Shown here: piece by piece, positions 17,573-63,933 of the stretch
Layout: each line of letters begins with the position of its first letter
Numbering within the stretch: the first letter of the stretch is position 1
Assembly: GCA_965649825.1 (NCBI GenBank)
Contig: OZ287695.1
Coordinates: forward strand, 2,221,288-2,285,287
Source of the DNA: Penicillus capitatus
Taxonomy: Eukaryota > Plantae > Chlorophyta
DNA: 64,000 nt
Direction of reading: 5' to 3'
The notes under the pieces: generated by a model
Told to the model about the DNA's origin: nothing
The model's database searches: none
What the model saw: the letters and a program-made list of their open reading frames with translations, nothing else
Translations under genes and position numbers: made by a program

Positions 17573-18192
17573 AAGCAAGTGCGTGTAAATGTGTATATGT
17601 CGTTTTGAGTCTTATTTGTGGATCTGTTGATATCTTATACAAAAATCATGAAGATCCCGATTTTTTGCTGCCTCACAGATGATTGATTACTTTTTAGCAC
17701 AAGACTAGGTTGTTTGTTCTCAAGCACTCGGCTGTGTGCCCTTAGAGCCTCGCTGAATGATAGGGGGTCATGACCTTGTTATTCAATGGACGATAGTATC
17801 CCCCAAATCTGTCCGTGCGATCCTTTTCCTCGACACTACCACAATCTGTGCTAAATAAAAAAAGAGATTATCATAGTACTAACCAGAAAAGGTGTCTATT
17901 TCATTAGTAAATGTCTCATCTTTGACAAATTCTCGAAGAGAAAACGGTACAAGTATGGATCAAATATTTGCTCGACTCTTACATTGACTCTCCCAGTCCC
18001 TCTAAATAGATTAGGTTACCCAAGCTCTCCTGTAACCATCTCTCCCCACTATTTCCATCTCGACAATTAATTTGTTCGTCACTCGAATCGTCATCGTTAC
18101 GTCACGCGATTCGACGCATGTTGACCCACCCCCTTACCTGATACGCACATCGCCCAGTCATTGAGTACGTGTGGATAAGCGCCTTTGTTGCC

Positions 18193-19626
18193 ATGGCGTA
18201 CAGAGCTTTCCTTTTGGCGCTTCTCTGTTTTTCTGTTGCCGTCCGAGCAATTCCAAAAGGCCAACTCAAGGAGTGGGAATTGAATCTGTTTGAAGTTGCG
18301 AACGCGAACAAGAACGCGCAATGCGATTCCTTTGAAATACTCGACCAGCCTGGTCACTACGCCGGATACTATTCCATTGACGGCACGGAAGACGGGCATT
18401 TGTTTTACATGTACTTCGAGAACCGCAACAAAGACCCGAATGCTCCTTTCGTTTTCTGGACAAACGGCGGTCCGGGTTGCTCCTCATTCTTTGGTCTTTT
18501 CAAAGAAAACGGCCCTTACGACATTCAAGAGGACTTGACTGTGTGCTGGAAAGAACACGGATGGGATGTTGGACACAATATCGTGTTCGTCGAACAACCC
18601 ATCAGCGTTGGCTACAGTTACAGTACTGAAGCAAAGGACAAAGTCTATGACGAAGAACGTGTTGGCAACGACATGATTGAATTTTTCTATGCCTTTCTTG
18701 AAGCCCATGAAGAGTTGGCTGAGAAGGATCTCTACATCACTGGAGAGTCTTTCGCAGGACACTATCTACCTGCGATTGCACGTGCCATTCTGTTAGCAAA
18801 TGAACGCAAAAAAGGTATACACCTAAATCTGCAGGGCATATTCATGATCGACCCATGGACGAGTCCATCATCGCACTATTTCTCATATCCAGTCTACGCC
18901 TATCAAGAGGGACTGATCGGTGAAGAGACCCGAGACCGAATGCTGTCCACTTGGTCAGATTGTGACAACGGTCTCAAATTTTGTGATGTGAGAGTGCCAA
19001 TCATCAAAACATTTGCATGCAATTCAGCCTATGCATTCTGTCAATCCCGTCTGTTCACTCCATTGCTCTTCCTACACCCGTTCATAAACTACTACGATGT
19101 TCGCAGAAAAGACTGCGTGGTGCCTGGCTGCTACGACATCAGCCTTCTGACACGATTCATGAACGATCCTAAGGTGAAGAAAGTACTCGGTGTTAACAAG
19201 AGCATTAAATGGGAAGACTGTGAAATGACGGTGCGTCGTGAGATGGGCTGGGATGTTGCGACAGACATGAAAGATGTCGTGGAGAAGGTGCTCAATGAAG
19301 GCATCCGAACGAGTGTCGTCGTGGGAGACAAGGATCTTATCTGCAACTACATCGGGAATGAACGCTGGGTCGACAGAATGAACTGGGAGAAGAGTGTCAA
19401 ATGGTCGAAAGCGAAGAACAAGACACTGGTCGTGAACGGAGAGGAGTCAGGATATGTCCGTGTTGTGGAACCCCTGTCTTTTGTGAAGGTGGAGGAAGCT
19501 GGACATATGATTCCGATGGACCAACCAGAAGTGGCTCTTGAGCTACTAACAGCTTTCACACGTGGAAAGAAGTATCCCACTGGCAAGCATGGCAGAAAAA
19601 AGAGCAAGAAATTTCCAACGACTTAG
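18193..19626 (+). CDS. Serine carboxypeptidase (S10 family), secreted/vacuolar, intronless
   Basis: Signal peptide MAYRAFLLALLCFSVAVRA; WTNGGPGCSS, catalytic Ser GESFAGHY, Asp GDKDLIC, His AGHMIPMDQP; one uninterrupted ORF. Confidence 0.95.
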   Translation: MAYRAFLLALLCFSVAVRAIPKGQLKEWELNLFEVANANKNAQCDSFEILDQPGHYAGYYSIDGTEDGHLFYMYFENRNKDPNAPFVFWTNGGPGCSSFFGLFKENGPYDIQEDLTVCWKEHGWDVGHNIVFVEQPISVGYSYSTEAKDKVYDEERVGNDMIEFFYAFLEAHEELAEKDLYITGESFAGHYLPAIARAILLANERKKGIHLNLQGIFMIDPWTSPSSHYFSYPVYAYQEGLIGEETRDRMLSTWSDCDNGLKFCDVRVPIIKTFACNSAYAFCQSRLFTPLLFLHPFINYYDVRRKDCVVPGCYDISLLTRFMNDPKVKKVLGVNKSIKWEDCEMTVRREMGWDVATDMKDVVEKVLNEGIRTSVVVGDKDLICNYIGNERWVDRMNWEKSVKWSKAKNKTLVVNGEESGYVRVVEPLSFVKVEEAGHMIPMDQPEVALELLTAFTRGKKYPTGKHGRKKSKKFPTT

Positions 19627-19745: not shown

Positions 19746-21379
19746 TTAATCCCATGCTTCCTTGACAGGGGAGGTTGCTTCGAATGTTCTAGTCCGTCGA
19801 ATCGATGTCTTGCCGCGTTCTATCTCTCTGCCGTTTCTACCGGCATACCATCCTTCCATTCGATGTTTTGCGCTAAGAAAATCATGAAGATCCACGACAG
19901 GGAGCAGTATTTTCGTCGATCGGGCATTCATATTAGCGATCACGTCCTCGATCTATGTCATCTTTGCCTGGTCATGGTGCAGAAACGAGATATAGAGCGT
20001 CAGTGCACGTCGAGCAAAGGTACGTCGTACAAGTGAGAGCAAGAAGTCTATCAAACCAAACTCAAACTGTCCCAGTCGGTGTTTGGGATAGTTGCTCTGT
20101 CGATGCGTTACTTTGAAACACGGAAAATGACAACGTACATGATTACAAACACACACAAGAGATCTCTGGAGCTGCTGTTTTGAAACAACGGACAACGAAT
20201 CATCGTCACTTTGAACGACTAAGTTCTCTTTCAGCTTCATGTAGACGAGGCACCGTGCAGGAACAGATCAAAGGTCGTCGTTTCCAAGACACATCCCTTT
20301 CGTCATCTGTTCTATCGACTCTTGTCGACGATCGGAGAAAGCTGCGTCAAACATTGTTCACTTTGAGGCCAACGAGTCTCTGTGATAATTAATGGAATAC
20401 ATACCAGTTGCAAAGACTGGCACTGTCTGTTATTGAAGAACCATGATCATATGTCTACAGACACAACTCTGCCGATCATCTTCACAAAGGTTCCGCTTTG
20501 TGGAGTACAAACCTTCAATACCATTCTTCTAGACAGGACAGAAAACTTCCTTTCTGCAATTGAACAATCTTGGATCAAGGATCTCCTTGTGAGATACAAA
20601 CAGCAACCACAGAATCCTGAACAACGCATCAACTTGACTTTCTGCTTCAACGCCAGAGGACCATACAATGGCCAAGTGTAGAAGGAAGCAACAGAATCAA
20701 CGCAATCTTCGGACGAACAAGGGCATCACGTGAGAATCCTATTCCCGTCACATGGGGTGCATGGAGTGTAGCACTCTTGTTTCAGTCGGACATCGCAATA
20801 GGTTGAAGCTGAAGCGCGGATCAATCTCTTCTAGTCCGGTTCCCTTCACTGGATATCTGGAATCGGCTATGTCAACGCATCAGAAACAGCAGACAAGAGG
20901 CTTTCTTGAAGAGATGACCGACCTTGTTCAATTCCTGCCCGCCAGAAAACGTTTGTTCGCTGGAGGGCTTTCAAGGTGCCTTCTCTAGTTATTAGAACAG
21001 TCGAGTTTTTCGTCCATACGGTCAAGAATAGGCTTTCTTGCGAGAAAAACGCGGCCGGAGAAGTGACCGTGAATGACTGGCCATTGCCTGCATAACGCCA
21101 ACACGTTATCACAGCCAATACCTTCAGCAAGACCTCTGTCTGCAGCACCGAATTCTCTGTTCTCTCTCAATCGATGATCGATCCGCCATCGGTGATTCTT
21201 TGCTTGAGAGATTAAACATCCTTTGAGTTCGTTTATCATAGCAGTTGTTGTCTAACCGACATATCCATCTCTGGTACCAGACAGGACACATCATTTGTTG
21301 GTTCCGAACAGACACCGTAGACGGTATACGCGACAGATGTGCGCGGTTTAAAACATCGATAAAGAAGTGGCGGCATCAT
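19746..21379 (-). CDS. Putative multi-exon protein with degenerate cyclic-nucleotide-binding-like segments
   Basis: Exon-like frames PAAFFSQESLFLTVWTKNSTVLITREGTLKALQR and LGQFEFGLIDFLLSLVRRTFARRALTLYISFL resemble the CNB F/G-G-E-x-L...R-x-A-x-V pattern. The exon chain is not fully resolved. Confidence 0.3.
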
Positions 21380-21782
21380 CTTGTGACCCGTCGAAAATTG
21401 AGGGTTTCTTTCACGTGGCCTCGTCACGCAGACCAACTGAAGCAAAATAAAGTATAACTCGAAAAAACGTATCTAGGTGCCGCGATTGATGCCGCCGACG
21501 CCTCTGTCGTGTAGATCGTTTAACTCATCTATCGACCTCTCTCTTCTGGTGTCATGTACCGTTCACTTGTTTTTCACAGTTTTTTCTCCCGATCATGACA
21601 CAAGGCAACAGCTTTGCCTTCTGTTTGGTGTCGATTTCAATTCTTTGTGTGTTTAACCGTTCTGTGATGTCGTGACGGAAGATGACATTCGTACGGTAAC
21701 ATGGGATCAGCGTCAACTTCCGATTCTCGCGTTGGGATCATGATTGCCTTTCCTACCGGTGCGTTGTGTTCTAGAAAGGAGC

Positions 21783-24700
21783 ATGATGCAGCCATCACGG
21801 CGTTCACGCCGTTCTGCATCTCGTTCTCAAGAACCAGCACCAGGGGGATGCATTTCGAACAAGACACTCAGTATGCAGACAAGGAAGGCGTCAGGAGGCA
21901 TGGTTTCACCTGTTGCAACATCGGTGTCGAGAAGACGACTGAGGAGCTGTTCATCTCATGTCCCTTCTCCACTTCAGCTGGGTGATGATGCTTCATTGGA
22001 GCAGATCTTGGAGCAGAGAATTCAGGAACTGCTGGAACTGCAGCAACAATCGCAGCTGAAACGTGATGATGCATCGCTGATGGAAGTCTGCTATGTGGAC
22101 ACGCAGACTGCCTTGAGTGGACACTATGCCAAAGAAATGCTCGATAACTGCTATTTCTTCATAAGAATCTGTCCCGATGGACAAATCGAGAGCTTCTTGA
22201 TGGAAGGATGGTCATCGATCCCTTGGTCTCCTCAACCACCGCCCTCCTTTGACACTCCCTTGTATTTTTCGCCAGGTAACACGGCCTCTCTTTCTGTTAG
22301 ATGAATTCTTTTGCAGATGCTGCGATCAACGGCAAGAAGAGAAAGAGTCGCGCTCATGTCTTGCGTCCAGGAGCTTTAAGCCTTATTCCCTACGGACAGG
22401 ACGAACGCGTCTTGTGGACGAAGCGAATTTTTCATTTTATCGGAAAAATGCGAAAAGTTCTTGGAGATCGACGCATAATGCTCCCATGGGGAGGATCCAT
22501 TCTGGATTCTGTGATTGGTGTCTATATCACACAGAACGTCAGCGACACATTCTCCAGCAAGGCGTTCATAAACATAACGGCGAAGTATCCATCTCCGCAT
22601 CCCAAGTGAGTCCGTCCGTCGTAACAGAATTCGAACATCTGCATTTTGCTGTGCAGGAAAAAGTCTTCGGATATTGTCGATTGGAAGAAAGTGCTGCATT
22701 CGCCAGTGCAGGAACTCAGTGAATGTATTGAGTGCAGAGGAATGCAGAATGTATTAGCGCATCGTATCATGTTAGAAGCCAGACATCCTGTTCATGAATT
22801 CTGATAGATGGCTGCTCGTTTTTAGGCGATTTCTGAGACAGGTGGAAGACGGAATGGTGTGGAAATGGTGGTGTGACAAGCAGGCAGTGTCCAAAGTCAA
22901 TGGAAAATTCAGTCCAATGTCGCCGTTTGCTGAGTACCTCCTCCTCTTGCCTGCCTGCCATCTGACAGTATCTGTTTCTGATCTAGACTGTTCAAGGCAC
23001 TTGAACAGATTCAACGGGATCTGAATGCAATACCAGACCATCAGCTCATCGGATACGTCCCTGGAGAGGTACGATCGTCTCTGTCTGTTACGATCCATGC
23101 ATGTCGTTCTCAGATGTCGTTGGAATGGATGCGTCGTCTGGATTGCGAGTCTGTTTCCGAATTGCTGACGTCAAATCTGGAAGGTTTTGGTGAAAAGAGC
23201 GCGGCATGCGTGACGCTGCTGTGCTTCCACTGGAAGAGTTTTCCAGTCGATGTGAATGTTGCTCGTATCTGCGCTCGACTTGGATGGATTCCACTCAAAG
23301 TGCATTTCGCAACAAATCCATATCTTCAGCAGTTTTTGATGTTCTCAGAGCACAGAGAAAATCGAAGATCTGGATCTCTACGCTCCCGAATTGGAAGTGC
23401 ATAAGTATTTAAAGGAAAGGCTCTATCATTTTGACTTTTCCACTCTTTACGAGCTGCATTACTTGATGATCACGATGGGAAAGGTCTTTTGTACAAAGAG
23501 TAATCCAAGATGCAGTGCATGTCCCCTCCGCAATAGGTGTGAATACGCATTCAATGGTGGAAAGAGGTGAGGCCGAATCCGTGTGACAGGAGAATAACAT
23601 TGTTTTGATGATTTGGATACAGATTCGAAAAATTAGTTTCTGTGAAGAAGCCCAGGAAAAAGAAGAAAGGAAATAATAAAGAAGAAGACGTAGAGCCAAA
23701 GACTCCTGTAAAACAAATACGCCACTTGCGGAGTCAGACAGTCGACCGTAGTGAACATCATGTTTCTGAGATGACAACATGTACAAATCCAGGCTGCGAA
23801 AAACTCCCGACAGAGTTAAAGACCGAAGCGATGTCGTTGAGTGGCGATATCGAAGACATTGCTGCTCCTTCTGTGGTCAAACGACCTTTCGATTCTGTCA
23901 GTTCGGTGCATCAGAAGATGCGCGAGATGGCCCCCCACAAACGCAGAGCAGGAAGCAATGTGATTGATGGGTCATCCGACAACAGCGAGGCAGCAATTCT
24001 CCGAATTCTGGAAGCGGTTACAGGTATCAATAGTTGTTTGAAGAAGGACGGGGAAGAGGAAACAAAGCAAGAGATAGAGACAACAGAAGAGATGAGCAGA
24101 GAAGTGGCTATGACTGTTCTCAATTTGACAGCGACAGAGACAATTCAAGCAGTGCGCACACAATACAGGTAAGTCGACACTCTGTCTTTCAGCTCTTCTC
24201 AGTCGCTGTTTCTTAGAGCCCTATCGAAGTTAATCCATCCCGACAAGTGCACCCACGAACAAGCTGGACTCGCGTTTTCGATCGTGAATCGAGCCTATCA
24301 CACACTAGATCAGTCAACACGCGCCATGAGTATGCTTTTTTGGGATTTGACGAATAATAATCTGCCCGTTGTAGGTGAGAGCTCGTGCTCCGAGTTAGCC
24401 GAAGACGCCGGAACAGAATCCTTTGCTGTATCCCACCTCCCTCTTGCCATTTACACACCACTGACATTTGCAAGCTCTCGCAATATCCTCCACAGTTTTC
24501 GTTTCGAGAATCCCGCTGCGCTTCGGGATCTGCTTCCATCGGAGATTCCGCATACTCTCCAGCACGGACTGTTCTTGTTGCCAGATCCACGTGATCTCCC
24601 ATCAGAAGATTCCCACTCGAATGTCTTTGCTCTCTTGACAGCAAAGGATGCTTTAGAAAGCCGCTTTCCACTGAACGGCACTTACTTTCAAACCAATGAA

Positions 24701-24937
24701 CTCTTTCTAGTGGAAGGACCGTCTTTTTCCGTTCCAGACAGTTATCTATCCGTTTCAGACGCGACGCCGAATGTCTCCATCGTCCGAGTGTATTTTGGAA
24801 CGTCCGTGTCGCGCATCACATTGGGAATGGGTACGGCTGAAGTCACACATCTGTTCAATCATTCCTACATCTGTGTTCGCAATTTTGATTTTGAAACAAG
24901 GCAGGCAACAAAGCTGCATCCCTTTCTTTCTCCTTGA
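21783..24937 (+). CDS. DEMETER/ROS1-like 5-methylcytosine DNA glycosylase with an internal DnaJ domain
   Basis: Domain A (GDRRIMLPWGGSILDSVIGVYITQNVSDTFSSKAF); VDWKKV...RGMQNVLAHRI; HhH-GPD core SLEW...LEGFGEKSAACVTLLCFHWKSFPVDVNVARICARLGWIPL; 4Fe-4S motif CTKSNPRCSACPLRNRC; J-domain (QYR|ALSKLIHPDKC...AFSIVNRAYHTL); C-terminal RRM_DME (FPLNGTYFQTNELF, VYFGTSVSRI, YICVRNFD). Confidence 0.9.
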
Positions 24938-25178
24938 TGTCTGATGAATAGATGCCACATTAAAACCATGTGTGAAAGTGTGAGGTGTGCCGAAGGGAAT
25001 GCCTGCCTGTGATGGTATTTATCAGTTTTTTGAGTCGGCAAACATTTTGTTACTGAGATATGTCGAGCATCATTCCTTCTTTTTACAAAAAGTTAAGTGC
25101 CTTACGTTGTGGATCCAACACGGTTATTTCAGTGAGACGAATAATAAAGGGCAGACAGCGTTCTTTCTGGGAGATGTT

Positions 25179-26168
25179 CTATTCCTCTTTGAACGGCGTG
25201 AACTTATCAACCAAATACGCGTAGGCATCAGAGGTGCAGACCTTCTCCCATGTTGGTGCCACATAGGGTTCCACTCTTATGGCAACCTGTTTGTAAACTG
25301 CTGTTGTTTGGAGATACTCTACTGCCGTCATCACTCCTTCGCTGAATCTGGCATAGTAACCAGTCCTTACAACCGCGTCAACAGAAGAACTGGCCGTTCT
25401 GGTTGCTGAATCTACTGGTCCAGACATTGCCGCACCTACAAACGCATACAACTACTCATGAGAGCCACCCTCATACTAGGCAGACAGGTTGGCACCTGCT
25501 TTCTGCGCCATGGATGCAATAACGGCTAACCAATGACCGATAATTGGCTGGACATCGTTATTGTAGTAGGAGCTTAAGTTCTGGACCAGCGAAGAGTTTT
25601 TTGCAACATTCACCCATTTCTGCACACCAGGCGTGCGCCACACTACACAGAGAGACGTCAGTTGCCGAAGCATATAGGTCCGTCGTTGCCGTACCTTGCA
25701 ATAAGGACTCTAAAGCAGCGATGAAGATAGCATACAGGACGACGACCGTCCCCACCAAAACACCGTGATTCTGCCAGGTCTCTGAGATACGAGCCGCAAT
25801 TGCTGACCAAAACTGGCGGACAGTCGTATATCGCTCGTAAGCACCATACGCTTCAAGTTGACTCCCCATCCATTCCGCCGATGCAACGACCTGTCCATCG
25901 TCGCGGCTCGAAGTTGTCAGCAGACGAGAGAGGGCCAGCTCACTTGTTGGTCGGCTGCCGTCAGTATCATCTTGCCAACGTCGCTTGACCACAGACGCAA
26001 TGTCGAGTAGACCACAGCCACACCTTCTTCGGATTTCGCTACGAAGGGAATGCATACAGACGGGACATGCTTGCGCACAATCCCATAGAGGTTCCAGCAC
26101 AAATCACTCATTTGCTGTTCCACAGTGGAAAAGAAAGTGCTGATGAACGCCAAATACTGCAACGCCAT
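25179..26168 (-). CDS. MLDP: Major lipid droplet protein (MLDP)-like
   Basis: MALQYLAFIST...VRKHVPSVCIPFVAKSEE...GKMILTAADQQ and the C-terminal TTAVYKQVAIRVEPYVAPTWEKVCTSDAYAYLVDKFTP follow the Chlamydomonas MLDP pattern as recalled (LKHLEFV..., YVPAVAQPYIAKAEE..., VQPVADPALDKVSKS). Confidence 0.7.
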
Positions 26169-29061: not shown

Positions 29062-29269
29062 TGTCATGATGATGAAGCGCCGAAGGATGATTATCCAAGA
29101 ACTGCCTCATCATCATAAGAGGCACTCCTGGCCAACAGCACTTAATGGCCACGTCGTCCCATCAAAACCTAGCACACGTCACATCAAAACCCTAGCCTAT
29201 AAAACGAGGATTATTGTCACATTCATTGTCTTTGTAAGAAACCTTGTTGCGTCTTCCACCGTCACGTAC
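29062..29269 (+). repeat. LTR copy a (lacks the last about 13 nt of U5)
   Basis: Starts TGTCATGATGATGAAGCGCCG; nearly collinear with the 3' LTR; ends ...CCGTCACGTAC directly against LTR b. Confidence 0.9.
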
Positions 29270-29506
29270 TGTCATGATGATGAAGAGCTGAAGGATGATG
29301 GTCCAATAAATGTCTCGTCATCGTAAGAGGCACTGATGGCCAAGTAGCTATTAATGGCCACGTCACATCAGAACCTACCCAGAACCTACCCGGCACCTAC
29401 TCAGCACCTATGAAACCCAACACTATAAAAAGGGGATTATTGTCACATTGATTATCTTTGTAAGAAACCTTGTTGCGTCTTCCACCGTCAGTACTTGCCC
29501 GTGTCA
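29270..29506 (+). repeat. LTR copy b (divergent U3, full U5, followed by the PBS)
   Basis: TGTCATGATGATGAAGAGCTG...GTACTTGCCCGTGTCA; contains a local about 11-nt tandem amplification (AGAACCTACCC/GGCACCTAC) absent from the other copies. Confidence 0.9.
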
Positions 29507-29508
29507 AA

Positions 29509-31296
29509 ATGGTTTCGGAGCTGCGACTTTCGAAGATGAACTGTGAGGAGTTCACGTCCCTTCCCAACTCGGCAGCCTTCGTCGAGGGCGATTACCGCCC
29601 TCAGATCAAGTACGTGGTCCAGAGAGTGGAGCCCAGATCCCCTGCCTTCGATCTGCTACAGCGAGTCGAACCGAACTTTCGAACGCAGGCAGCATTCAAT
29701 CAGGCCTTTGCCGGACCCGCGGCGTCAGTTCGCACGATCTTCGCCAACGAGGTTTTGCGCCTAAGGACGGAGGACAAGTGGCAGGTCATCAAAGATCTCG
29801 TGGCTCGAGAATGTCCTGCGACGTCACTTTCCGCAGAGGAGCAGTTAGGCAGAATGATGAAGTCAAAAGGAGAGACTTGGTTGGACTTCGTAGTTCGCTA
29901 TTGTGCCACCTGTGTGTCGACGACGGCTTCACGGGAGACACAAGTCAAAACGCTATACAGGAAGATCCCGACCAATCTCCGGAGACTGATACTTTCACTG
30001 CCATCGACTGCCACCGTGACGGACATGACCACTGTCCTCAGGAATGCGAGCTTCTGGGAATCGAGCATGTTGACGCGAACGGATACAGATCATGATGCTA
30101 CTGACCCCGAGCTGGCGACGACGCCACAGGTCAACGTTGCCACCGACGGAAGAGTGATCGGCAACGACGGCTCGATCAACTTTTCAGCGATCACAACTGC
30201 GGGAAGAGTCATGTTCGGAGCCCGAGAGATCTGTAGAACCTCCCGACGAGAGGCGCTCAACATGCTGAACTTCTTACAAACGATCTGCAATTCGAGCACT
30301 ACATCGACAGGCCGACGAAGACCAGGAAGCCAGTCGAGGAAATGGAATGGGCGTCGTGCCTTCGCCGCAGAGAAGTCTCTGCCGAAAGGAAACGAAGCAC
30401 ACGTCTGCGAGACCATTAGCGAGACAGAAGAAGACCTAACGGAACAGGGTGTGCAGTTCGCACACACCGTTAGAGCGGTCACCAAGACCAGGAGAGTTTT
30501 AAAACTTGGTCTCATCTCCCAGAGCCATTTAGGATATCCACGCCATATTGACGCTTTAGTCGATACTGGCGCCGAGTCCTCCATTGTATCCCTGGCACTA
30601 GCGAAGGAACTGGGAGTAAAGATTAGGCCAGACGAGACCCGTCTGCTGTTGGCCCATGGAGAGACCGCGAAGGTCACCGGAAGATGCGACTTCCAGGTAA
30701 CTCTGGCGCAATCCTCCGATCAGCACTTCTCCATGAGTTGCCTCGTACTACCGAGACCTGGCTATGATCTGCTGTTGGGTATGGACGCGATGATTGACAA
30801 TAAGATCTCCGCGCACCCCCACGACAGATCCATCAGCATAGGAGGACGACAGGTCAAATGCCTTTTCGCAGGACCAAAGGCCGACAAGAGTGCGGCCAAT
30901 GAGATCGTGCATGAAGAGATATGCCGCTTCACCGAAAAAGTCGAACACCTACCGAGAATCACCGAGGAACGGCTGCAGGTGCCGTTGAACCGGTCAATCG
31001 TACTCGGACCACGAGAGAGCAAGATGCTCAAGACGCCGATCGTGCTCCCAGGCGCACTCGTGTACAAGAGGGTTCCCACTGTGGCGCCGCGATTCTCGGT
31101 ACACCTCGGTGTGCAGTACCACACGTTCTCAACGCTGACGCTCACCAACCATGCCGCGGAACCAGTGAAGATTACTGGAAGAACGACGATCTTCGAAGTG
31201 CCTGCAAGACAAGGCATTAACTATACCGCGTGCGATTGCAACGGAAAGCAACATCCGTTAAGAAGCAACCGGCGATCTTTTCCCAAGCGGCAGTAG
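29509..31296 (+). CDS. gag-pro: Retrotransposon gag-protease ORF with a dUTPase-like spacer
   Basis: Gag-like region (RMMKSKGETWLDFVVRY) and aspartic protease IDALVDTGAESSIVS...YDLLLGMD. Confidence 0.85.
   Translation: MVSELRLSKMNCEEFTSLPNSAAFVEGDYRPQIKYVVQRVEPRSPAFDLLQRVEPNFRTQAAFNQAFAGPAASVRTIFANEVLRLRTEDKWQVIKDLVARECPATSLSAEEQLGRMMKSKGETWLDFVVRYCATCVSTTASRETQVKTLYRKIPTNLRRLILSLPSTATVTDMTTVLRNASFWESSMLTRTDTDHDATDPELATTPQVNVATDGRVIGNDGSINFSAITTAGRVMFGAREICRTSRREALNMLNFLQTICNSSTTSTGRRRPGSQSRKWNGRRAFAAEKSLPKGNEAHVCETISETEEDLTEQGVQFAHTVRAVTKTRRVLKLGLISQSHLGYPRHIDALVDTGAESSIVSLALAKELGVKIRPDETRLLLAHGETAKVTGRCDFQVTLAQSSDQHFSMSCLVLPRPGYDLLLGMDAMIDNKISAHPHDRSISIGGRQVKCLFAGPKADKSAANEIVHEEICRFTEKVEHLPRITEERLQVPLNRSIVLGPRESKMLKTPIVLPGALVYKRVPTVAPRFSVHLGVQYHTFSTLTLTNHAAEPVKITGRTTIFEVPARQGINYTACDCNGKQHPLRSNRRSFPKRQ
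29510..29525 (+). promoter_or_regulatory. Primer-binding site, tRNA-iMet-like
   Basis: TGGTTTCGGAGCTGCG lies 3 nt after the LTR end and differs at 2 of 12 positions from the canonical plant TGGTATCAGAGC. Confidence 0.7.
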
Positions 31297-32714
31297 GCTT
31301 GCAGTCAGGCATACTGTCGCAGAAGCCTAAAATTGGCTGCTGCAGTCTCGAACAGCTGCTGGCCCGATTCCCAGACGTACTTTGTGAAAAAATTGGACGT
31401 TTTTCGGGATGGGAGGTCGGCATCCGCGACGTACAAGGGCAACTACATTCGGTCTTTACCAAAGTTCCCTACACGTTCGCTGCTGAAACGACGGCATGCA
31501 GAAACGAGATCGACGCACTCATCGAAGCCGGAGTCGTCAGCCGATTTCACGGAAAACCGAAGCACATCATCCCCTGGTTTTCTGTTCCGAAGAAGAACTC
31601 GCTCGAGCGGCGAGTAGTGCTAGATTTTCGCGGACTCAAAACGCTGACCGCAAGGAGTCCCGCGCTGCCCATGCATCGAGAAGGCGCAGTTCAGAACCTG
31701 TCCGGGATGCGCCACTTTGCGAAGTTTGATTTCCGACACGGATTCTACCAGATTCCTCTGGCACATGGCCTCCAGCCTTATTTTGTCACCGTGTTCGACC
31801 GCAAGCCCTCTGCCTTCACACGACTTCCGATGGGTTGGATCAACTCAATGGCTTTCTTCGACCAAGCTGTGCAAGAAACCATAGCGGAAGCACGAGACCA
31901 GTTAAAGCGGCAGAAGATTCGAGCAGCAATCGAGAGCTATGCCGACGACGTCTGCGTAGGAGCACGGACACAAGAAGATCTCGAGAGAGCAGTTCTCCAA
32001 CTGCTGACGATCTATGACAAATACGGATGGACGGCATCTCCGAAGAAGTGCCAGTACGGTGTTAACGAGGTCGAGTTCCTCGGACATCGTTTCACGCCTC
32101 AAGGCGTTTTGCCCCCCAAAAGCACGCTGCAGAAGTTGCTCGCTGCCGAGCCTCCTCAGACAAAGACTGCAGTCCGCTCGTTTTTGGGGCTCCTTCGCAC
32201 CTTGCTCCACTATTGCAAGTGCGACCTCCGCAGCTTAGCGGCCCTTCAAAGACTCACGAACGCTGAGACCAAAGTCATCCAACAATACTGGGCAGAGGAT
32301 CCTAACCGCTGGGACACCCTCCTCCGCTCTCTCGATCGCATCTGGTATAACCGGCCTGACGCAGTTGGCCGTTCTGTCGATCTCTATGTCGACGCCAGCA
32401 GAGATGGCTTTGGCTACGCATTGTTCGATACAGAGTCTAAACGTCTCCCCCGCCTTGGAGCTGGCGGTTTTCAACGTGAACAATTCCGATCCAGTGGCAA
32501 AGCTGAGCTACTCGGAATGGAAAGGGCACTCAAGGAAATCAGGCACCTGCTCATGGGCAAACACCTCAACATCTTCACTGACGCCACCGTTGTCAAACAA
32601 GCGAGTGGCAGCAGCGACCAGAGCTTCCTCGTGCAGCGTCATCTAGACGCACGCCCTCAACCTCTCTGCAGGAAAGGTAAAGCACGTGGATGGCGTGGCG
32701 AACGTCATCGCTGA
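31230..32714 (+). pseudogene. pol: Retrotransposon RT and RNase H, out of frame with both gag-PR and IN
   Basis: PWFSVPKKNSLERRVVLDFRGL, AKFDFRHGFYQI, FTRLPMGWINS, YADD, EVEFLGH; RNase H YVDAS...AELLG...IFTDA. A 4-nt insertion (GCAC, 32649-32652) breaks the join to ALNLSAGKVKHVDGVANVIADLLSR. Confidence 0.92.
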
Positions 32715-34032
32715 CCTCCTCAGTCGCAGCCCCTGGTGGAGGCACACTCTAGAAGGACCCACGACGACCGAAGCTCCCGCGTTTGCGGCCACCGCACACC
32801 ACCACTCCTGGCCAGTGTGGTACCTACAGATGGAAAACTATCTGAAGACAGGTCGATGTCCCGATGACGCCAACCCCCAGCAGCGGGCGCGTCTTAAGCA
32901 CCGCGCCACCTTTTTCCGCCTACGCCATGAACGCCTGGAATACTCCGCCGACGGATTTCTATGGACGCCTTGCTGTCTCGACAGGAAGGCCATTCCTCAG
33001 TGGCTGGCCCGAGCGCACGAAGATGGCGGACACTACGGCATCCAGACCACAACCCAGAAGTTACAGGAAATGATCTATTTTCCTGACGCCCCCTCTCACG
33101 TAAAAGAGTGGGTCCGCAGCTGTCCCCAGTGCCAGCACCTTGCCCGCCACGACCCACCCGTCGCCCAGTCATTCAATACATGGCAACACATGAACCAATG
33201 CGTAGGTCTGGACGTCATCGGCCCCATGAAGCCTGACGGCTCCGCCAAATATATCATCGCTGCCGTGGACCTATGCACACGATTTTGTCTCCTCTCGGCA
33301 TCCTCGCAAGCCAACGCCACATCCATCATCAAACTGCTCGAGCGCTGGACAGCCCTCTTCGGCAACCCCGATTGTCTGTAGACGGACTACGATTCAGCGT
33401 TCGTAGGCAATCAGGTGTCCAACTGGATGTCGGCCCGAGGAATTCAACGCCGCACCATCCCAACATACCGACCACAGTGCAATGGGACCGTCGAGCGTCT
33501 CAATCAAGAAGTCATCCGCCGCCTACAACGCCTTCAAACTCAAGGCAAGTGGACATCGGCGCTTCCCCAGATTCAGGCAATGCTGAACGCGCATCCGAAC
33601 TCGGTGACCAAACTCAGCGCCGCGCAAACCGCCTTCGGTTATCAACCCCGCACGCACTCTGTTCCCGCGCCATCTACCTCCGCCGCGACACCTTGCTCCG
33701 ACGAACCGCATCCGTTACGACACCGCGACCTTCTCGCAACTCGTTGGACCGCCATCGATCACCAGATGCAGCACCAGCAACAACACCGCATGTCCCAATC
33801 TCACCGTTGCTCCGACCTACCAGTCGGCTCCCAGGTGCTGCTCTTTGACAATCAACGCGCGAAAACGCACGGCAACAAACTTGCTCCGCAATGGCAAGGA
33901 CCGTACACCATCCACGATAAATTTTCTCCCCAGCTCTACCGTCTCGTTTCTTCTTCTTCCAAGAAACCCTTTCTAGCACATCGCGATCATTTACGTTGTT
34001 TTCTCCCTCGGAGTTCAGCGCAGGGAAGCGAT
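32686..34032 (+). pseudogene. int: Retrotransposon integrase with a premature TAG
   Basis: HHCC (AHEDGGHYG...CPQC), DDE core (GLDVIGP; CL*TDYDS; VERLNQE) and GPY motif (WQGPYTI); in-frame TAG at 33379-33381; no chromodomain. Confidence 0.92.
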
Positions 34033-34249
34033 TGTCATGATGATAAAGCGCCGAAGGATGATTATCCAAGAACTGCCTCATCATCATAAGAGGCACGCTT
34101 GGCCAACGGCACTTAATGGCCACGTCACATCAAAACCTACCACACGTCCCATCAAAACTCTTGCCTATAAAACGAGGATTATTGTCGCATTCATTGTCTT
34201 TGTAAGAAACCTTGTTGCGTTTTCCACTGTCACGTACTTGCCCGTGTCA
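34033..34249 (+). repeat. 3' LTR (copy c)
   Basis: TGTCATGATGATAAAGCGCCG...CGTACTTGCCCGTGTCA, preceded by the purine-rich AGGGAAGCGA. Confidence 0.92.
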
Positions 34250-38712: not shown

Positions 38713-40531
38713 CTACGATAAGTTTGCGATTCTTCCTCTATATCGGTCGATGTTGTTCTTCGTCAGAATTGTGCACTGCTCAATCGTCAAAGGATTTCGA
38801 GTAAATGGACAGATGCGATTTTCACTAAGACATGCTCTCCATGTCGCTATGCCCACCACATGTCCATAGGGAGATATGGCCGGTGTCACCACTGGCTGCA
38901 TGGTAATGTTGTCGATGAGATCTGGCAATGGATTCTCATTATCCACTGGAACATCTGACAGGCTTCCACGATTGATACAGCGCTGCCTGTAACGATCACT
39001 GCGGCCCAGTGTCGACCACTTGTTCAGGGCACAGCCCGCATCGTCATCATCTCCTTCGCCTTCAGCCTCGACCTCTCCAGTCTCATCATCCCCCTCGCTC
39101 TCGTACTCGATACGCTTTCTAGAGGAGTAAGGACAGAAGGTGCTCCCGTCCGATCGCTGACGGACAACCTGAGAGAGCTTGCGGGATGCGATCTGTCGAT
39201 CGAGCTTTCCTTCCCAGTAGACTTCGCACTTCTTTTCCGTATCTAATGCCTCTATCTTTCGAAGAATATCTGGCTGGATGAGTCCAAAGTACTCAGGACC
39301 GGCTATGGCTGTCTTGGGAGGAGGGGGTAACTTCTCACCAGCTTCTCTTCGTTTCTCAATTTCTTTATTGATGCGCTTGAGCACGAGCGTCCAACAACCC
39401 GTGCAGCTTTTTGAGATTAATTTATCGGCAGGTCGATCATATGCCGTGATCACAAAAGTCGGTAATGGCCAAAACTCACCTCTCACAATCTCACATTCGT
39501 GGATGCAGAGGTCTTCCAGACGTACAGAGCTACGAAACTTCGTCCTGGACTTGAAACCCAGTGGAAAAATGTACCCAGCATTGAACCATCCTTTTTCTAG
39601 CCTGCACATGCATGTCATGTGTCACATCTTGACCAGCTCATTCGAACACACTCTCTTACCTTCTCTCGCCAATGCGAATCAATTCAACACGTTTCTGAGC
39701 TTTTTGCTTCACACGCCCTCTGCAGGTATAACCAGATGTTGAAATTGCTTTGTCACCACTAAGCGCAATGCTTTTTTTCTTATTTGATGAAGTGTCTTCA
39801 GATTTTGTATCTCTGTCTTCATCACTCATTCCTGCCAGAGAAGGAAAAACGGTTCTCCTGGTACGGGCCCCTCTTGGTCGCAAAACCCCTGAACTTCCCA
39901 TGAACGCTGCCACAGTGACATCTCGGAAAGTATTTTGACAGCGACAAGTCCTACCTTCTCTTGACCCGTAAAGTCCCCCATGAATCTGCCCAACACAGTA
40001 TGGATAGAGGAGGACATATAACACTGCGAAACTTTACTGTGGTGATCTTTCCGTGGCTTTTAGGCTTCTCTGCCAACATGCATTTCAGAGCGCTCGTGGC
40101 ACGACTGTCGATTCCTCTTCTGAGAGTGCTGCGCTTGCCTTTAGTGCCCCAGACAAGAGTTGTCCCATCATCCTGCCACATTGTCTTCAAACCATGAGTA
40201 TGATATCGAGACAAGATGCATAACACATACCCTCTGATCTTCTTGAAAATTCGATATCTCCCACGTTCTCTTGGCCGCCGCTGCCCTTGTCTTGACCACA
40301 GTACGTCCTTCATTTTTGTGCCCTCTGTTCTCAACAATGGGCACTGTATCAGAGGATCTTGCATTCGCAATGTATTTCCCAGGTGAGCCTTCCATTTGCA
40401 ATGGACCTGGTGGAGGAAGTGGGCACAGAATACGTCACTTGAGACAATGACGCACTCGAGTCTTCGTCGGAGAGCCGGTCTGACGTTTCCATCTGGTCTA
40501 TGCGAATGCGATCCGTATCTGCGCAGAGCAA
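38713..40531 (-). CDS. FYR-domain (FYRN+FYRC) protein with a C-terminal U-box-like domain; 5' end uncertain
   Basis: WFNAGYIFPLGFKSRTKFRSS...HECEI...PTFVIT...SCTGCW (FYRN), IAGPEYFGL...IEALD (FYRC), acidic linker, then LIDNITMQPVVTPAISPYGHV...CPFTRNPLT (U-box-like). Confidence 0.75.
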
Positions 40532-51425: not shown

Positions 51426-53194
51426 ATGACGCGGCCTTCAGCACTCGGACGACACTTGTCCCGAGTCTCGACCATAGAGGACCGTGATGCAGCATCAGCC
51501 TGTTACTGCTCGACGTTTGTACCGGGCAGTCAGCAAATGATTCCACAGTACGTGGCTTCTGCTTACGGAAGTGGGGACATCAGGTCAGTCCATGAGCAGT
51601 CTATGTCTTCATGAAACCTCATGGCTGTGTAGAATTCACGACACGAGTGCACTGACCATGTCGACATCAGATGGCATATCCCCTGCCCATCTGACATCTT
51701 CTTGGCTGGGGACTTCCCCTATCGTGCAGTTAAAAACAATGACGACAGGTCTCTCGCATCTGATCTCCAGACATGGCATTTGCTGAATGCATTTTTTCGT
51801 TGCACAGACTCCGACACCGTGTTGCTCGCGCTGGAACACTTTGGCAATATCACTGGTCTCAGTCTTAGGGATGTTCTGACGGATACCAGAGATGAAGAAC
51901 GGTTTATTCAACCTCGGACGCTCTTCTGCTTAGCCCACGACATGTGTCCTTCGTCCATCAACTGTTTTGCATTGGACAGAGTCAACAAGCGCATCTTCAC
52001 AGGTGATAGAAATGAACGAACGATGTTTCATGCAATGGCGATCAATCATGGTGTTTATCAGGCGGCGTGGATGGCAACTGGCTGTGTTGGGACATCGAGA
52101 GATTTCCAGCAGGTCAAGAGATGATGCCGCATCAGATCTATCAGGCACATCAGCGATGCATTACTCAGGGAGACTACTGTCAAGGACTGGTGGCTTCCGC
52201 TTCGGAAGATGGATCGGTCTGCGTCTGGGATGTCCGTTCTCAATCCTGTATCTGTGCCTTCGATCCAACAACGGGAAAGCATCTGCCTTTGAATCAGAAG
52301 CAGCGTGTGGATCACTGCAGCAACGAAACCAGTTTGAGTGTTCGCTTTGACTGGACTGGACGTCGAGTTATTGCCTCCTCTCGACAGAAACGCATCACTG
52401 TATGGAACATCAGAGCCGATGCATCACAGTGCTCTTTTCGTACAGACGCTATTCCCTATGCCCTGGATACTGCTGGAGATGCTGTTCTCTTCACGAGCGC
52501 GGACCATCGGGTCTGGCGATACTCCATGTCGAATGCGCTTATGCAATGCTATCAAACATCAACACCAGAGATTCGTGACATCCATATTGATGAAGAACTG
52601 CAGCAAACAATGGTGATTTCTGGCGGCGCAGACACTGTCGAACTGTTATCTCTGAACGGGACTTCACTCGGGAGAGCAACTGATAGAAAGGAGATGCTTG
52701 TCCCCGAATCCCATCCCGTTGCCATTCGTGAGCAATTAGCATGGTCGCCCGTCACTCTTTCAGATCCCGACGGACAAGGAGGACCACTCATCGGGACTCC
52801 GCAATACTCTCCTGAAATCGAAGACATGTGCGAATCAGTTTCAGAAATGGGCTCAGATGATGGCGAGATGTTCGAAGAAGATCAGGGATCGTCTGTCTTC
52901 GAGTATTCTCAAGCAAATGAGGACATGCCGTTCTCTTCGGACGAGGACGACGAAGAAGAGATGCACAGCATTGAAGGAGAAGATGAACTTGCTCACGACT
53001 TCTTCTTTCAGCCTTTTGGCGCCATGGATATGGACGAACCATCTTTGGAGGCATACGGTTTCACATCGGACTCTGAGATTTCACCAAGGGATGACTTTGT
53101 CATGTCTGCTGGGCAAGAATACAGCAACTGCGAGTTTTCCAGTTCGCAGGGGGATAGCGGAGGGTCTTCAGATGATGAAGAAGACGATGAGTAG
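51426..53194 (+). CDS. WD40-repeat protein, THOC6-like, with an acidic C-terminal extension
   Basis: SINCFALDRVNKRIFTG..DGNWLCWDIE, VASASEDGSVCVWDVRS, ITVWNIR; layout follows THO complex subunit 6 (N-terminal GDI, terminal G...VEL...G). Confidence 0.7.
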
Positions 53195-63860: not shown

Positions 63861-63933
63861 GCACCCATGGCGCAATGGATAGCGCGCTTGACTTCTAATC
63901 AAGCGGTTGCGGGTTCGAATCCCGCTGGGTGTG
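63861..63933 (+). tRNA. trnR-UCU: tRNA-Arg (anticodon UCU), intronless
   Basis: Acceptor GCACCCA/TGGGTGT, D-arm GCGC-AATGGATA-GCGC, anticodon arm CTTGA-CTTCTAA-TCAAG, T-arm GCGGG-TTCGAAT-CCCGC, discriminator G; 73 nt. Confidence 0.92.

What the first reader, a model, noticed from the sequence alone, without database searches (positions are those of the whole stretch)
21783..24937. DEMETER-type DNA demethylase with an intact J-domain where land plants have the permuted CXXC
Seen: domain A, the HhH-GPD core with both catalytic residues (K of GFGEKS, D of PVDVNV), the 4Fe-4S motif and RRM_DME are all present. Between the Fe-S motif and the RRM sits a spliced helical segment, EVAMTVLNLTATETIQAVRTQYR|ALSKLIHPDKCTHEQAGLAFSIVNRAYHTL (HPD at 24236-24244), and no perm-CXXC cysteines are visible. 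Established: HPD J-domains stimulate Hsp70 ATPase; DME/ROS1 excise 5mC. Inference: active demethylation here may be coupled to Hsp70 and so to heat or stress. I recall J-domain fusions being mentioned in surveys of algal Demeter-like proteins, so the architecture may not be new, but I know of no functional test.
Basis: partly seen in the sequence, partly recalled or inferred. Interest (0 to 1): 0.72.

Follow-up and report, generated by a model that had tools for sequence, protein, structure and literature searches.

The report
Green-algal DNA demethylase carrying a J-domain
The window encodes a DEMETER/ROS1-type DNA glycosylase with a genuine Hsp70-recruiting J-domain between its catalytic core and C-terminal domain, but this layout is the published norm for chlorophyte green algae, so only its untested function remains open.

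Summary
A nine-exon gene (21783-24937, + strand, introns 41-56 nt, 918 aa) encodes domain A, a split HhH-GPD glycosylase domain with catalytic K390 and D408, a Cx6Cx2Cx5C iron-sulfur loop, a J-domain and RRM_DME.

- **J-domain:** Pfam DnaJ scores 36.3 bits against a cut-off of 27.8. HPD lies at 24236-24244.
- **Perm-CXXC:** no hit.
- **Intron 24169-24216:** it is needed to keep the reading frame open. The spliced product reproduces the exact residue spacing seen in relatives.

The architecture is not new. All 30 non-redundant chlorophyte homologues I examined carry HPD(K/R) at the same place, and none of 86 streptophyte homologues does. The DnaJ fusion is described in Zhang et al. 2019 (PMC6717269), citing Iyer et al. 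2011.

- The J-domain does not sit at the perm-CXXC site. It lies in the flexible linker upstream of domain B. The perm-CXXC cysteines are an insertion inside domain B, where this protein has a short cysteine-free loop.
- Nothing supports a link to heat or stress.

Hsp70 recruitment is a reasonable inference that nobody has tested. 5mC specificity is also untested, because ROS1 F589 is aliphatic here.

Verdict: a real feature, a new member of a known kind, of low to moderate interest.

The parts
21783..24937 (+). Whole coding region of the DML (DEMETER-like) gene. It has nine exons and encodes 918 aa. The stop codon TGA is at 24935-24937.
   Evidence: Manual model with eight GT..AG introns of 41-56 nt. 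Homologues score up to 564 bits. The AF2 model matches ROS1 cryo-EM structures at TM 0.81-0.83, normalised to the target.
21783..22275 (+). Exon 1, the N-terminal region (aa 1-164). It is mostly predicted disordered, with one helix at aa 69-88. It is weakly conserved and has no domain hit.
   Evidence: pLDDT is below 50 over aa 1-68 and 133-177. Identity to other Bryopsidales is 19-24%. No Pfam hit.
22349..22770 (+). Domain A plus the first segment of the split glycosylase domain (aa 176-298). It contains the TQNVSD motif, equivalent to ROS1 T606, Q607, N608 and D611. Intron 22606-22656 interrupts it.
   Evidence: Alignment A1 and residue mapping. pLDDT 77-97.
22845..23068 (+). Short insert that splits the glycosylase domain (aa 306-362). 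It is the equivalent of the long disordered insert of land-plant DMLs. Intron 22934-22986 interrupts it.
   Evidence: The discontinuous domain is described in PMC3045615. This is the least certain part of the gene model, because the Caulerpa model omits this region.
23114..23566 (+). Second glycosylase segment. It holds the HhH motif GFGEKS (catalytic K390, 23195-23197), PVDVNV (catalytic D408, 23249-23251) and the 4Fe-4S loop C472-C488 (23490-23540). Intron 23300-23348 interrupts it.
   Evidence: These columns are invariant in 32 aligned homologues. Coordinates. K, D, Y1028 and all four Cys are conserved relative to ROS1.
23565..23968 (+). Linker 1 (aa 497-612). It is predicted disordered and basic at its start (KKPRKKKKGNNK, a likely nuclear localisation signal). 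It contains the conserved DIED motif. The span begins with the last two bases of exon 7 and crosses intron 23567-23622.
   Evidence: pLDDT is below 50 over aa 511-613. Alignment.
23969..24040 (+). Helix just before the J-domain (aa 613-636, AAILRILEAV...). This element lies upstream of the J-domain in all chlorophyte homologues.
   Evidence: Modelled as a helix with pLDDT 70-93 in the full model and 82-92 in the segment model. It aligns across classes.
24098..24355 (+). J-domain (aa 656-725). Helix I is aa 656-662, helix II aa 671-685, the HPD loop aa 686-688, and helix III starts at aa 695. Intron 24169-24216 interrupts it.
   Evidence: Pfam DnaJ scores 36.3 bits, above the 27.8 cut-off. pLDDT 85-94. 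Almost all of the top 50 Foldseek PDB matches are J-domains, with core rmsd 0.8-1.3 A. A profile of the homologue alignment (A1) also finds solved J-domains.
24169..24216 (+). Intron 8 (48 nt, GTAAGT...TTCTTAG). It lies inside helix II of the J-domain.
   Evidence: Reading through gives TAA as the first codon past the one that spans the donor site. The spliced spacing matches homologues. Bryopsis has no intron at this position, so the intron is specific to this lineage.
24236..24244 (+). HPD tripeptide, the signature that stimulates the Hsp70 ATPase.
   Evidence: Coordinates. It is invariant in 21 aligned non-redundant chlorophyte DML sequences and present in 30 non-redundant ones.
24356..24445 (+). 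Linker 2 (aa 726-755), predicted disordered.
   Evidence: pLDDT is below 50 over aa 721-755.
24446..24637 (+). Start of domain B (aa 756-819). It is the equivalent of ROS1 LRTEHRVYELP...LLAIW. The position where streptophytes carry the permuted CXXC insert is here the cysteine-free loop PRDLPSEDSHSN.
   Evidence: Alignment. No Cys lies in aa 737-897. No PF15629 hit.
24638..24919 (+). RRM_DME fold (aa 820-913).
   Evidence: Pfam scores 64 bits against a cut-off of 34.6. The FPLNGTYFQ motif is invariant. pLDDT 83-93.

Best explanation
This gene is the chlorophyte form of the DEMETER/ROS1 (DML) bifunctional DNA glycosylase/lyase. It comes from a siphonous green alga of the order Bryopsidales. The closest protein is from Caulerpa lentillifera.

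Shown here:
- The catalytic core is complete. It has domain A, a split HhH-GPD domain with the lysine nucleophile and the aspartate, the Fe-S loop, and domain B with RRM_DME.
- The model folds like Arabidopsis ROS1.
- A true J-domain (helices I-III with an invariant HPD) is tethered by two predicted-disordered linkers between the Fe-S loop and domain B.
- This module is conserved in essentially all chlorophyte DMLs and absent from streptophyte DMLs.
- It is not positionally equivalent to the permuted CXXC.

Inferred:
- The enzyme excises 5-methylcytosine, or a closely related pyrimidine, and nicks the DNA.
- The J-domain recruits the nucleocytoplasmic Hsp70 and triggers its ATPase at the site where the glycosylase sits.
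- Hsp70 then acts on the glycosylase itself or on proteins bound next to it. The most likely purpose is to release or recycle an enzyme that, in land plants, stays tightly bound to its abasic product. An alternative is to loosen repressive chromatin complexes at methylated loci.
For: - Gene model and motifs.
- Pfam: RRM_DME, DnaJ and HhH-GPD hits, no Perm-CXXC.
- Family survey: of 32 aligned family members, 22 match DnaJ and 6 match Perm-CXXC. The DnaJ matches are taken to be chlorophyte (23 members including the window) and the Perm-CXXC matches streptophyte (9 members), in line with the precomputed Pfam lists; itself gives counts only.
- HPD(K/R) lies between the Fe-S loop and the RRM in 30 non-redundant chlorophyte sequences. 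They include named Bryopsidales and Trebouxiophyceae proteins, plus unnamed metagenome sequences that I judge prasinophyte-like by their sequence character only. None of 86 streptophyte sequences has it.
- HPD, A80, F84 and A90 of the segment are invariant.
- The J-domain is an island of conservation: 32-48% identity, against about 15-25% in most flanking linker comparisons.
- AF2 gives pLDDT 85-94 for the J helices and below 50 for both linkers.
- Foldseek matches the J segment almost only to J-domains, including the DnaK-bound DnaJ J-domain 5nro_B at rmsd 1.3 A.
- The full model matches ROS1 7yhq/7yhp/7yho at TM 0.81-0.83. The profile hits ROS1 chains at E=1e-257.
- ROS1 residues T606, Q607, N608, D611, K953, D971, Y1028 and the four Cys are conserved.
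- The architecture is published: PMC6717269, text and Fig. 5 legend, and bioRxiv 10.1101/175091.
Against: - No transcript data were available, so every splice site is predicted. Exons 4-5 (aa 299-362) are poorly conserved and are the weakest part of the model.
- Helix IV of the J-domain is not conserved.
- Only some of the basic helix-II residues of E. coli DnaJ are kept. R22, Y25 and K26 correspond to R675, Y678 and R679, while R27 corresponds to A680.
- ROS1 F589, Q584 and W1012 are not conserved (I, L and K here). F589 matters for the 5-meC>T preference, so substrate choice could differ.
- Nothing in the sequence says what Hsp70 acts on. The release/recycling role is inference only.
- No paper in the searched library reports any functional test.
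Confidence: 0.75

Rival explanations
1. The J-domain acts mainly without Hsp70 ATPase cycling. It would serve as a protein-interaction or transcription-activating module, as proposed for Arabidopsis DNAJ1/DNAJ2. Those proteins are recruited to methylated DNA by SUVH1/SUVH3 and counteract silencing.
For: - Land plants use DnaJ-domain proteins as anti-silencing activators at methylated loci (PMC10396365).
- Helix IV is not conserved, and there is no G/F or client-binding domain.
Against: - HPD is invariant in all aligned chlorophyte DMLs across distant classes. That is the signature expected if Hsp70 ATPase stimulation is under selection.
- The helix II/III hairpin superposes on Hsp70-bound J-domains.
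Confidence: 0.15
2. The J-domain makes demethylation sensitive to heat or stress. For example, free Hsp70 would be titrated away by unfolded proteins, and that would change glycosylase activity.
For: Only a general analogy with Hsp70-titration circuits such as heat-shock factors. No tool result bears on it.
Against: - Most dedicated J-domain fusions, such as auxilin, use constitutive Hsp70 for a specific remodelling task.
- I saw nothing stress-related in the locus, and I did not examine its promoter.
- No paper in the searched library links algal DMLs to heat.
Confidence: 0.1
3. The protein is not a dedicated 5mC demethylase. It would be a base-excision repair glycosylase with a different preference, such as T:G mismatches or oxidised or deaminated pyrimidines. 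The J-domain would then serve repair-complex handling.
For: - ROS1 F589 is I218 here and non-aromatic in 17 of the 18 chlorophyte homologues aligned at that column (one has Y). Mutating F589 reverses the 5-meC>T preference in ROS1.
- Q584 and W1012 also differ (PMC3045615).
- I found no biochemical test of any chlorophyte DML.
Against: - All other tested ROS1 active-site residues, domain A, the split domain and RRM_DME are conserved. These features set DMLs apart from Nth/MutY enzymes.
Confidence: 0.15
4. The fusion is a gene-model artefact. Two neighbouring genes, a glycosylase and a J/RRM protein, would have been joined in error.
For: No transcript evidence was available. The exact 918-aa model is not in the public protein collection.
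Against: - Exon 8 is a single open 546-nt exon. It starts 56 nt after the Fe-S exon and runs into helix II of the J-domain.
- Exon 9 carries HPD, helix III, domain B and RRM_DME in one frame.
- The same order of parts recurs in about 30 homologues from independent annotations.
Confidence: 0.02

Closest known systems
Chlorophyte DEMETER-like proteins with a DnaJ domain. Examples are Ostreobium quekettii CAD7701147.1 and Auxenochlorella protothecoides proteins (both named 'J domain-containing protein' in UniRef), and Bryopsis sp. KO-2023 BSKO_12081/BSKO_11122. The architecture is described in Zhang et al. 2019 PNAS (PMC6717269), citing Iyer et al. 2011.
   Same: The order of parts is the same: domain A, split HhH-GPD, Fe-S loop, linker, helix before the J-domain, J-domain with HPDK(C/N), linker, domain B/RRM_DME.
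   Different: - The window protein, Bryopsis and Ostreobium lack the C-terminal CGxCxxCLNPxxKxAC (classical CXXC-like) tail. That tail is present in some of the Trebouxiophyceae proteins and in many of the unnamed prasinophyte-like sequences.
- The window has a lineage-specific intron inside helix II.
- The insert and linkers are much shorter (918 aa, against 1100-1500 aa for most complete homologues).
Arabidopsis ROS1 / DEMETER (solved structures 7YHO, 7YHP, 7YHQ)
   Same: - The catalytic core and domain B fold are shared (TM 0.81-0.83).
- K, D, the TQNVSD motif, Y1028 and the Fe-S cysteines are conserved.
- The glycosylase domain is split in the same way.
   Different: - There is no permuted CXXC, no DemeN domain and no long N-terminal region.
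- A J-domain is present. HMM scores of the streptophyte linkers are no better than those of shuffled sequences.
- F589, Q584 and W1012 are not conserved.
Arabidopsis SUVH1/SUVH3-DNAJ1/DNAJ2 complex, and the alpha-crystallin-domain proteins of the IDM complex
   Same: In both cases a chaperone-type module (a J-domain or a small-HSP-like domain) is brought to methylated DNA to oppose silencing (PMC10396365; PMC11930289 abstract).
   Different: In those systems the chaperone-type protein is a separate polypeptide, recruited by a methyl-DNA reader. It is not fused to the glycosylase. I did not test homology between the J-domains.
Dedicated J-domain fusions that aim Hsp70 at one complex, such as the auxilin J-domain in clathrin uncoating (PDB 1xi5 appeared among the fold matches)
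   Same: A lone J-domain without G/F or zinc-finger client domains, attached to a targeting part (rank 39).
   Different: The target here is unknown. The resemblance is one of logic, not of ancestry.

Membership tests
DML (DEMETER/ROS1) DNA glycosylase/lyase family | HhH-GPD fold with the catalytic lysine in the HhH motif and the catalytic aspartate | tested here: met
   K390 in GFGEKS and D408 in PVDVNV are both invariant in 32 homologues. Pfam HhH-GPD scores 26.1 bits, just under the 26.2 cut-off. The fold matches ROS1 and EndoIII structures.
DML (DEMETER/ROS1) DNA glycosylase/lyase family | Glycosylase domain split into two segments by an insert, preceded by conserved domain A | tested here: met
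   Domain A plus segment 1 is aa 176-305, the insert is aa 306-362, and segment 2 is aa 363-496. The feature is defined in PMC3045615.
DML (DEMETER/ROS1) DNA glycosylase/lyase family | 4Fe-4S cluster loop Cx6Cx2Cx5C | tested here: met
   C472, C479, C482 and C488 are invariant.
DML (DEMETER/ROS1) DNA glycosylase/lyase family | C-terminal domain B with the RRM_DME fold | tested here: met
   PF15628 scores 64 bits against a cut-off of 34.6. It is modelled as a beta-rich fold at pLDDT 83-93.
DML (DEMETER/ROS1) DNA glycosylase/lyase family | Residues shown by mutagenesis to matter for 5-meC excision in ROS1: T606, Q607, N608, D611, F589, Y1028 (also Q584 and W1012) | tested here: inconclusive
   T, Q, N, D and Y are conserved. 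F589 is I218, Q584 is L213 and W1012 is K446, and the chlorophyte homologues depart from ROS1 at the same three positions.
DML (DEMETER/ROS1) DNA glycosylase/lyase family | Excision of 5-methylcytosine followed by beta/delta-elimination | not testable with these tools
   This needs an enzyme assay.
Streptophyte-type DML (land plants and charophytes) | Permuted single CXXC unit (PF15629) inside domain B | tested here: not met
   No hit at E<=10. No Cys lies in aa 737-897. The aligned position is a 12-residue cysteine-free loop.
J-domain proteins (Hsp40/DnaJ co-chaperones) | Sequence match to the J-domain profile above the curated threshold | tested here: met
   PF00226 scores 36.3 bits against a cut-off of 27.8, E=6.3e-9. 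The match covers model positions 5-57 of 63 and runs across the splice junction.
J-domain proteins (Hsp40/DnaJ co-chaperones) | HPD tripeptide in the loop between helices II and III | tested here: met
   aa 686-688, between modelled helices 671-685 and 695-725. It is invariant in the homologues.
J-domain proteins (Hsp40/DnaJ co-chaperones) | Helical hairpin fold, helices I to IV | tested here: inconclusive
   Helices I-III are met: pLDDT 85-97, and the core superposes on solved J-domains at rmsd 0.8-1.3 A. A distinct helix IV is neither modelled nor conserved.
J-domain proteins (Hsp40/DnaJ co-chaperones) | HPD-dependent stimulation of Hsp70 ATPase | not testable with these tools
   This needs a biochemical assay.
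Chlorophyte-type DML architecture (Zhang et al. 2019; Iyer et al. 2011) | DnaJ domain between the Fe-S loop and the RRM fold | tested here: met
.
Chlorophyte-type DML architecture (Zhang et al. 2019; Iyer et al. 2011) | One or more classical CXXC units elsewhere in the protein | tested here: not met
   There is no CGxCxxC...C motif in the protein. The reading frames I inspected up to 25000 show no such motif, and the sequence up to the next gene was read only as DNA. The motif is also absent in Bryopsis and Ostreobium, so the feature varies within chlorophytes.

The most novel reading that the evidence does not exclude
The J-domain turns the glycosylase into its own Hsp70 client. After base excision the enzyme stays locked on the abasic or nicked product, as ROS1 does. 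The tethered J-domain then fires Hsp70, which pulls the enzyme off in an ATP-driven step. This would give chlorophyte DMLs true multiple turnover and would hand the lesion to downstream repair. Streptophytes would have lost this built-in release factor when they gained the permuted CXXC and separate accessory proteins.
Probability: 0.2. Interest if true: 0.65.

Novelty: new member of a known kind. Interest (0 to 1): 0.3.

Why it matters
If the J-domain really couples a DNA demethylase to Hsp70, it would be a rare case of an ATP-driven chaperone built into a base-excision enzyme. It could explain how product-inhibited glycosylases are recycled, or how repressive chromatin is opened at methylated sites.

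The strict conservation of HPD across distant green-algal classes says the module is under selection, yet I found no functional test. The fusion itself has been in the literature since 2011 and 2019 and is labelled in public protein databases.

This window therefore adds only:
- a compact, short-intron member from Bryopsidales;
- the clarification that the J-domain and the permuted CXXC are independent insertions at different points.

Tried and rejected
1. **A degenerate J-domain relic in land plants.** The ROS1 linker segment 'ALVALTAETASLP' lines up by eye with 'LSKLIHPDKCTHE'. I built an HMM from 30 chlorophyte DML J-domains and searched 87 non-HPD linker sequences. Their scores were no better than shuffled controls: real mean -2.3, shuffled mean -3.2 with maximum 7.2. 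The only real hit (23.8 bits) was P0040, which is a garbled chlorophyte sequence. Rejected.
2. **A conserved intron in the J-domain as support for the splice.** The Bryopsis locus L001 encodes its J-domain in one exon. The intron is therefore lineage-specific. Support comes instead from the conserved residue spacing and from the in-frame TAA.
3. **Exact look-up of my 918-aa model in the public protein collection.** It was not found, so there is no independent check of the gene model. The same call identified P0001 as Caulerpa lentillifera and P0004 as Ostreobium quekettii.
4. **Iyer et al. 2011.** It could not be read, because it is not held. Its content is cited only through PMC6717269.
5. 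**Literature searches for a functional test of an algal DML J-domain.** They found none.
6. **Rfam scan of the window.** It gave only one tRNA.
7. **Nearest non-DML relatives of the J-domain.** I did not run a further large database search. The answer would not change the verdict.
Full report
**The observation**

I read 21000-26000 and translated all three forward frames. I then assembled a nine-exon model on the + strand:

| Exon | Coordinates |
|---|---|
| 1 | 21783-22275 |
| 2 | 22317-22605 |
| 3 | 22657-22770 |
| 4 | 22826-22933 |
| 5 | 22987-23068 |
| 6 | 23114-23299 |
| 7 | 23349-23566 |
| 8 | 23623-24168 |
| 9 | 24217-24937 |

All eight introns are GT..AG and very short, 41-56 nt. The product is 918 aa.

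Pfam gives these scores:

| Family | Bits | Cut-off |
|---|---|---|
| RRM_DME | 64 | 34.6 |
| DnaJ | 36.3 | 27.8 |
| HhH-GPD | 26.1 | 26.2 |
| EndIII_4Fe-2S | 15.9 | 20.5 |
| Perm-CXXC | no hit at E<=10 | - |

The DnaJ match has E=6.3e-9 for the whole protein and 3.6e-10 for the segment alone.

HPD is at 24236-24244, K390 of GFGEKS at 23195-23197, D408 of PVDVNV at 23249-23251, and the Cx6Cx2Cx5C loop at 23490-23540.

The intron 24169-24216 has a GTAAGT donor. Read through, it gives TAA as the first codon past the one that spans the donor site, so it must be removed for the J-domain and the RRM to be made. The spliced junction (…TQYR|ALSKLIHPDKC…) has the same residue spacing as Bryopsis, Ostreobium and Caulerpa proteins. 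The Pfam match also runs across the junction without a gap. No transcript data were available, so the splice remains a prediction, though a strong one.

**What the protein is**

A database search returned 248 relatives. The best hit is a Caulerpa lentillifera protein. Next come two Bryopsis sp. KO-2023 proteins and one from Ostreobium quekettii; the Caulerpa and Ostreobium identities come. The window therefore comes from a siphonous green alga of the order Bryopsidales, nearer to Caulerpa than to Bryopsis.

An AlphaFold2 model built on 32 aligned homologues is confident over the glycosylase core, the J-domain and domain B. Its best structural matches are the three cryo-EM structures of Arabidopsis ROS1 (TM 0.81-0.83, normalised to the target), followed by endonuclease III enzymes. 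A profile of the alignment hits ROS1 chains at E about 1e-257.

I mapped the ROS1 residues tested by mutagenesis (PMC3045615) onto the alignment:
- Conserved: T606, Q607, N608, D611, K953, D971, Y1028 and the four cluster cysteines.
- Not conserved: F589 is I, Q584 is L, and W1012 is K. The other chlorophyte proteins depart from ROS1 at the same three positions.

F589 is one of the two aromatic residues whose mutation reverses the 5-meC>T preference in ROS1. The claim '5mC demethylase' is therefore inferred from family membership and is not secure in detail.

**The J-domain**

- *Fold.* The full model shows helices at aa 656-662, 671-685 and 695-725, with HPD in the loop between the last two, at pLDDT 85-94. 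A second model of aa 615-730 alone gave mean pLDDT 83.8. Nearly all of its top 50 PDB matches are J-domains, with core rmsd 0.8-1.3 A. They include the J-domain of DnaJ bound to DnaK.
- *Helix II.* Aligned with E. coli DnaJ, helix II keeps R22, Y25 and K26 as R675, Y678 and R679. R27 is A680.
- *Helix IV.* It is not conserved.
- *Linkers.* Both flanking linkers (aa 511-613 and 721-755) are predicted disordered. The module is flexibly tethered rather than packed into the core.
- *Extra helix.* A further helix just upstream (aa 613-636) is conserved in all chlorophyte homologues.

**How widespread the architecture is**

HPD(K/R) lies between the Fe-S loop and the RRM in 30 non-redundant chlorophyte sequences. 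These include named Bryopsidales proteins (Caulerpa, Bryopsis, Ostreobium) and named Trebouxiophyceae proteins (Auxenochlorella, Coccomyxa, Trebouxia, Myrmecia, Apatococcus). They also include many unnamed metagenome sequences, which I take to be prasinophyte-like from their sequence character only. None of the 86 streptophyte homologues among the best 120 hits has HPD(K/R) there.

In a direct Pfam scan of the 32 aligned proteins, 22 match DnaJ and 6 match Perm-CXXC. One search gives counts only. I take the DnaJ matches to be among the 23 chlorophyte members (window included) and the Perm-CXXC matches among the 9 streptophyte members, as the precomputed Pfam lists indicate.

HPD and three helix-III residues are invariant. 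The J-domain is 32-48% identical to homologues, while most flanking linker comparisons fall to about 15-25%. It is therefore an island under constraint.

**Position relative to the permuted CXXC**

The alignment of C-terminal halves shows that the J-domain lies upstream of the conserved element that opens domain B (ROS1 LRTEHRVYELP). The land-plant CXXC cysteines sit further downstream, inside domain B, between LLAIWTPGE and ILIPCRTA. At that spot the window has only PRDLPSEDSHSN. There is no cysteine anywhere in aa 737-897.

I also asked whether land plants keep a decayed J-domain in their linker. An HMM of the algal J-domains scored the streptophyte linkers no better than shuffled sequences, so I reject that idea.

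**What is already known**

Zhang et al. 2019 (PMC6717269) state that chlorophyte and stramenopile DME homologues carry 'the Hsp70-interacting DnaJ domains'. They also state that the permuted CXXC lies between the Fe-S loop and the RRM fold in Streptophyta, and that classical CXXC units occur at other positions in algae. They cite Iyer et al. 2011 and draw these architectures in their Fig. 5. The 2017 preprint says the same. UniRef names the Auxenochlorella and Ostreobium proteins 'J domain-containing protein'.

Five literature searches found no functional test.

**Mechanism**

Shown here are a complete DML core and a conserved, tethered, HPD-bearing J-domain. The rest is inferred from what J-domains are known to do. 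The J-domain docks ATP-bound Hsp70 and triggers hydrolysis, so that Hsp70 clamps onto a nearby polypeptide.

The nearest candidate client is the glycosylase itself. ROS1 is a low-turnover enzyme because it stays tightly bound to the abasic site it creates (PMC2715244). A built-in Hsp70 recruiter could therefore act as a release or recycling device.

The second option is remodelling of silencing complexes at methylated DNA. This would echo the Arabidopsis SUVH1/3-DNAJ1/2 anti-silencing complex (PMC10396365).

A gene-fusion artefact is very unlikely, for three reasons:
- Exon 8 joins the post-Fe-S linker to helix II in one open frame.
- Exon 9 carries HPD, domain B and the RRM together.
- The same order of parts recurs in independent annotations.

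**Differences within the family**

- The window protein, Bryopsis and Ostreobium end just after the RRM. They lack the CGxCxxCLNPxxKxAC tail seen in some Trebouxiophyceae and many of the prasinophyte-like sequences. This enzyme therefore has no CXXC module of either kind.
- The intron inside helix II is absent from Bryopsis.
- The protein is compact (918 aa), with a short insert in the glycosylase domain.

**Verdict**

The feature is real and correctly described. It is a further member of a published architecture, and the functional question is still open. Interest is about 0.3.

Noticed in passing
window 29062-34238: An LTR retrotransposon of about 5.2 kb. Direct repeats of about 210 nt at 29062-29270 and 34033-34238 are 93-96% identical. 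They flank ORFs with gag-type aspartyl protease, reverse transcriptase and RNase H hits (29470-34089). GC is 54-57%, against about 47% in the rest of the window. A partial extra copy of the repeat lies at 29270-29496.
   Followed up: partly
window 38713-39618 (- strand): An ORF that combines FYRN and FYRC domains with a U-box. FYR domains usually accompany chromatin enzymes, so a pairing with a ubiquitin-ligase U-box may deserve a look.
   Followed up: no
window 18169-19626 (+), 58735-60036 (-), 52067-53194 (+), 63861-63933 (+): Neighbouring genes: a serine carboxypeptidase S10 in one 485-aa ORF, an OMP decarboxylase domain that may be part of a UMP synthase, a WD40 protein, and tRNA-Arg(TCT).
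   Followed up: no
P0005, P0007, P0008, P0012-P0021 (homologues), C-terminal 30-100 residues: Some Trebouxiophyceae DMLs (Auxenochlorella, Trebouxia) and many of the unnamed prasinophyte-like DMLs end with a conserved CGxCxxCLNPxxKxACxxRR motif, which resembles a classical CXXC unit. The Bryopsidales proteins, including the window's, lack it.
   Followed up: partly
P0099 (Marchantia MpROS1a) and P0093 (Adiantum), region aligned to ROS1 aa ~1230-1280: These two streptophyte DMLs have no Perm-CXXC Pfam hit on record and lack most of the cysteines in the aligned region. Not every streptophyte DML carries the permuted CXXC.
   Followed up: no
window aa 213, 218, 446 (22460-22462, 22475-22477, 23412-23414) and the same columns in chlorophyte homologues: ROS1 Q584, F589 and W1012 are L, I and K here. 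At the F589 column, 17 of the 18 aligned chlorophyte DMLs are non-aromatic (one has Y). All nine aligned streptophytes keep F and W. This could mean a different base preference.
   Followed up: partly
P0001 (Caulerpa lentillifera g2561.t1): The public Caulerpa model looks mispredicted. It skips the stretch equivalent to window aa 261-362, and its last ~40 residues do not align with RRM_DME.
   Followed up: no
window 21783-24937, introns: All eight introns are 41-56 nt, which is unusually short and uniform. The orthologous Bryopsis gene spans 6.5 kb for 1369 aa.
   Followed up: no
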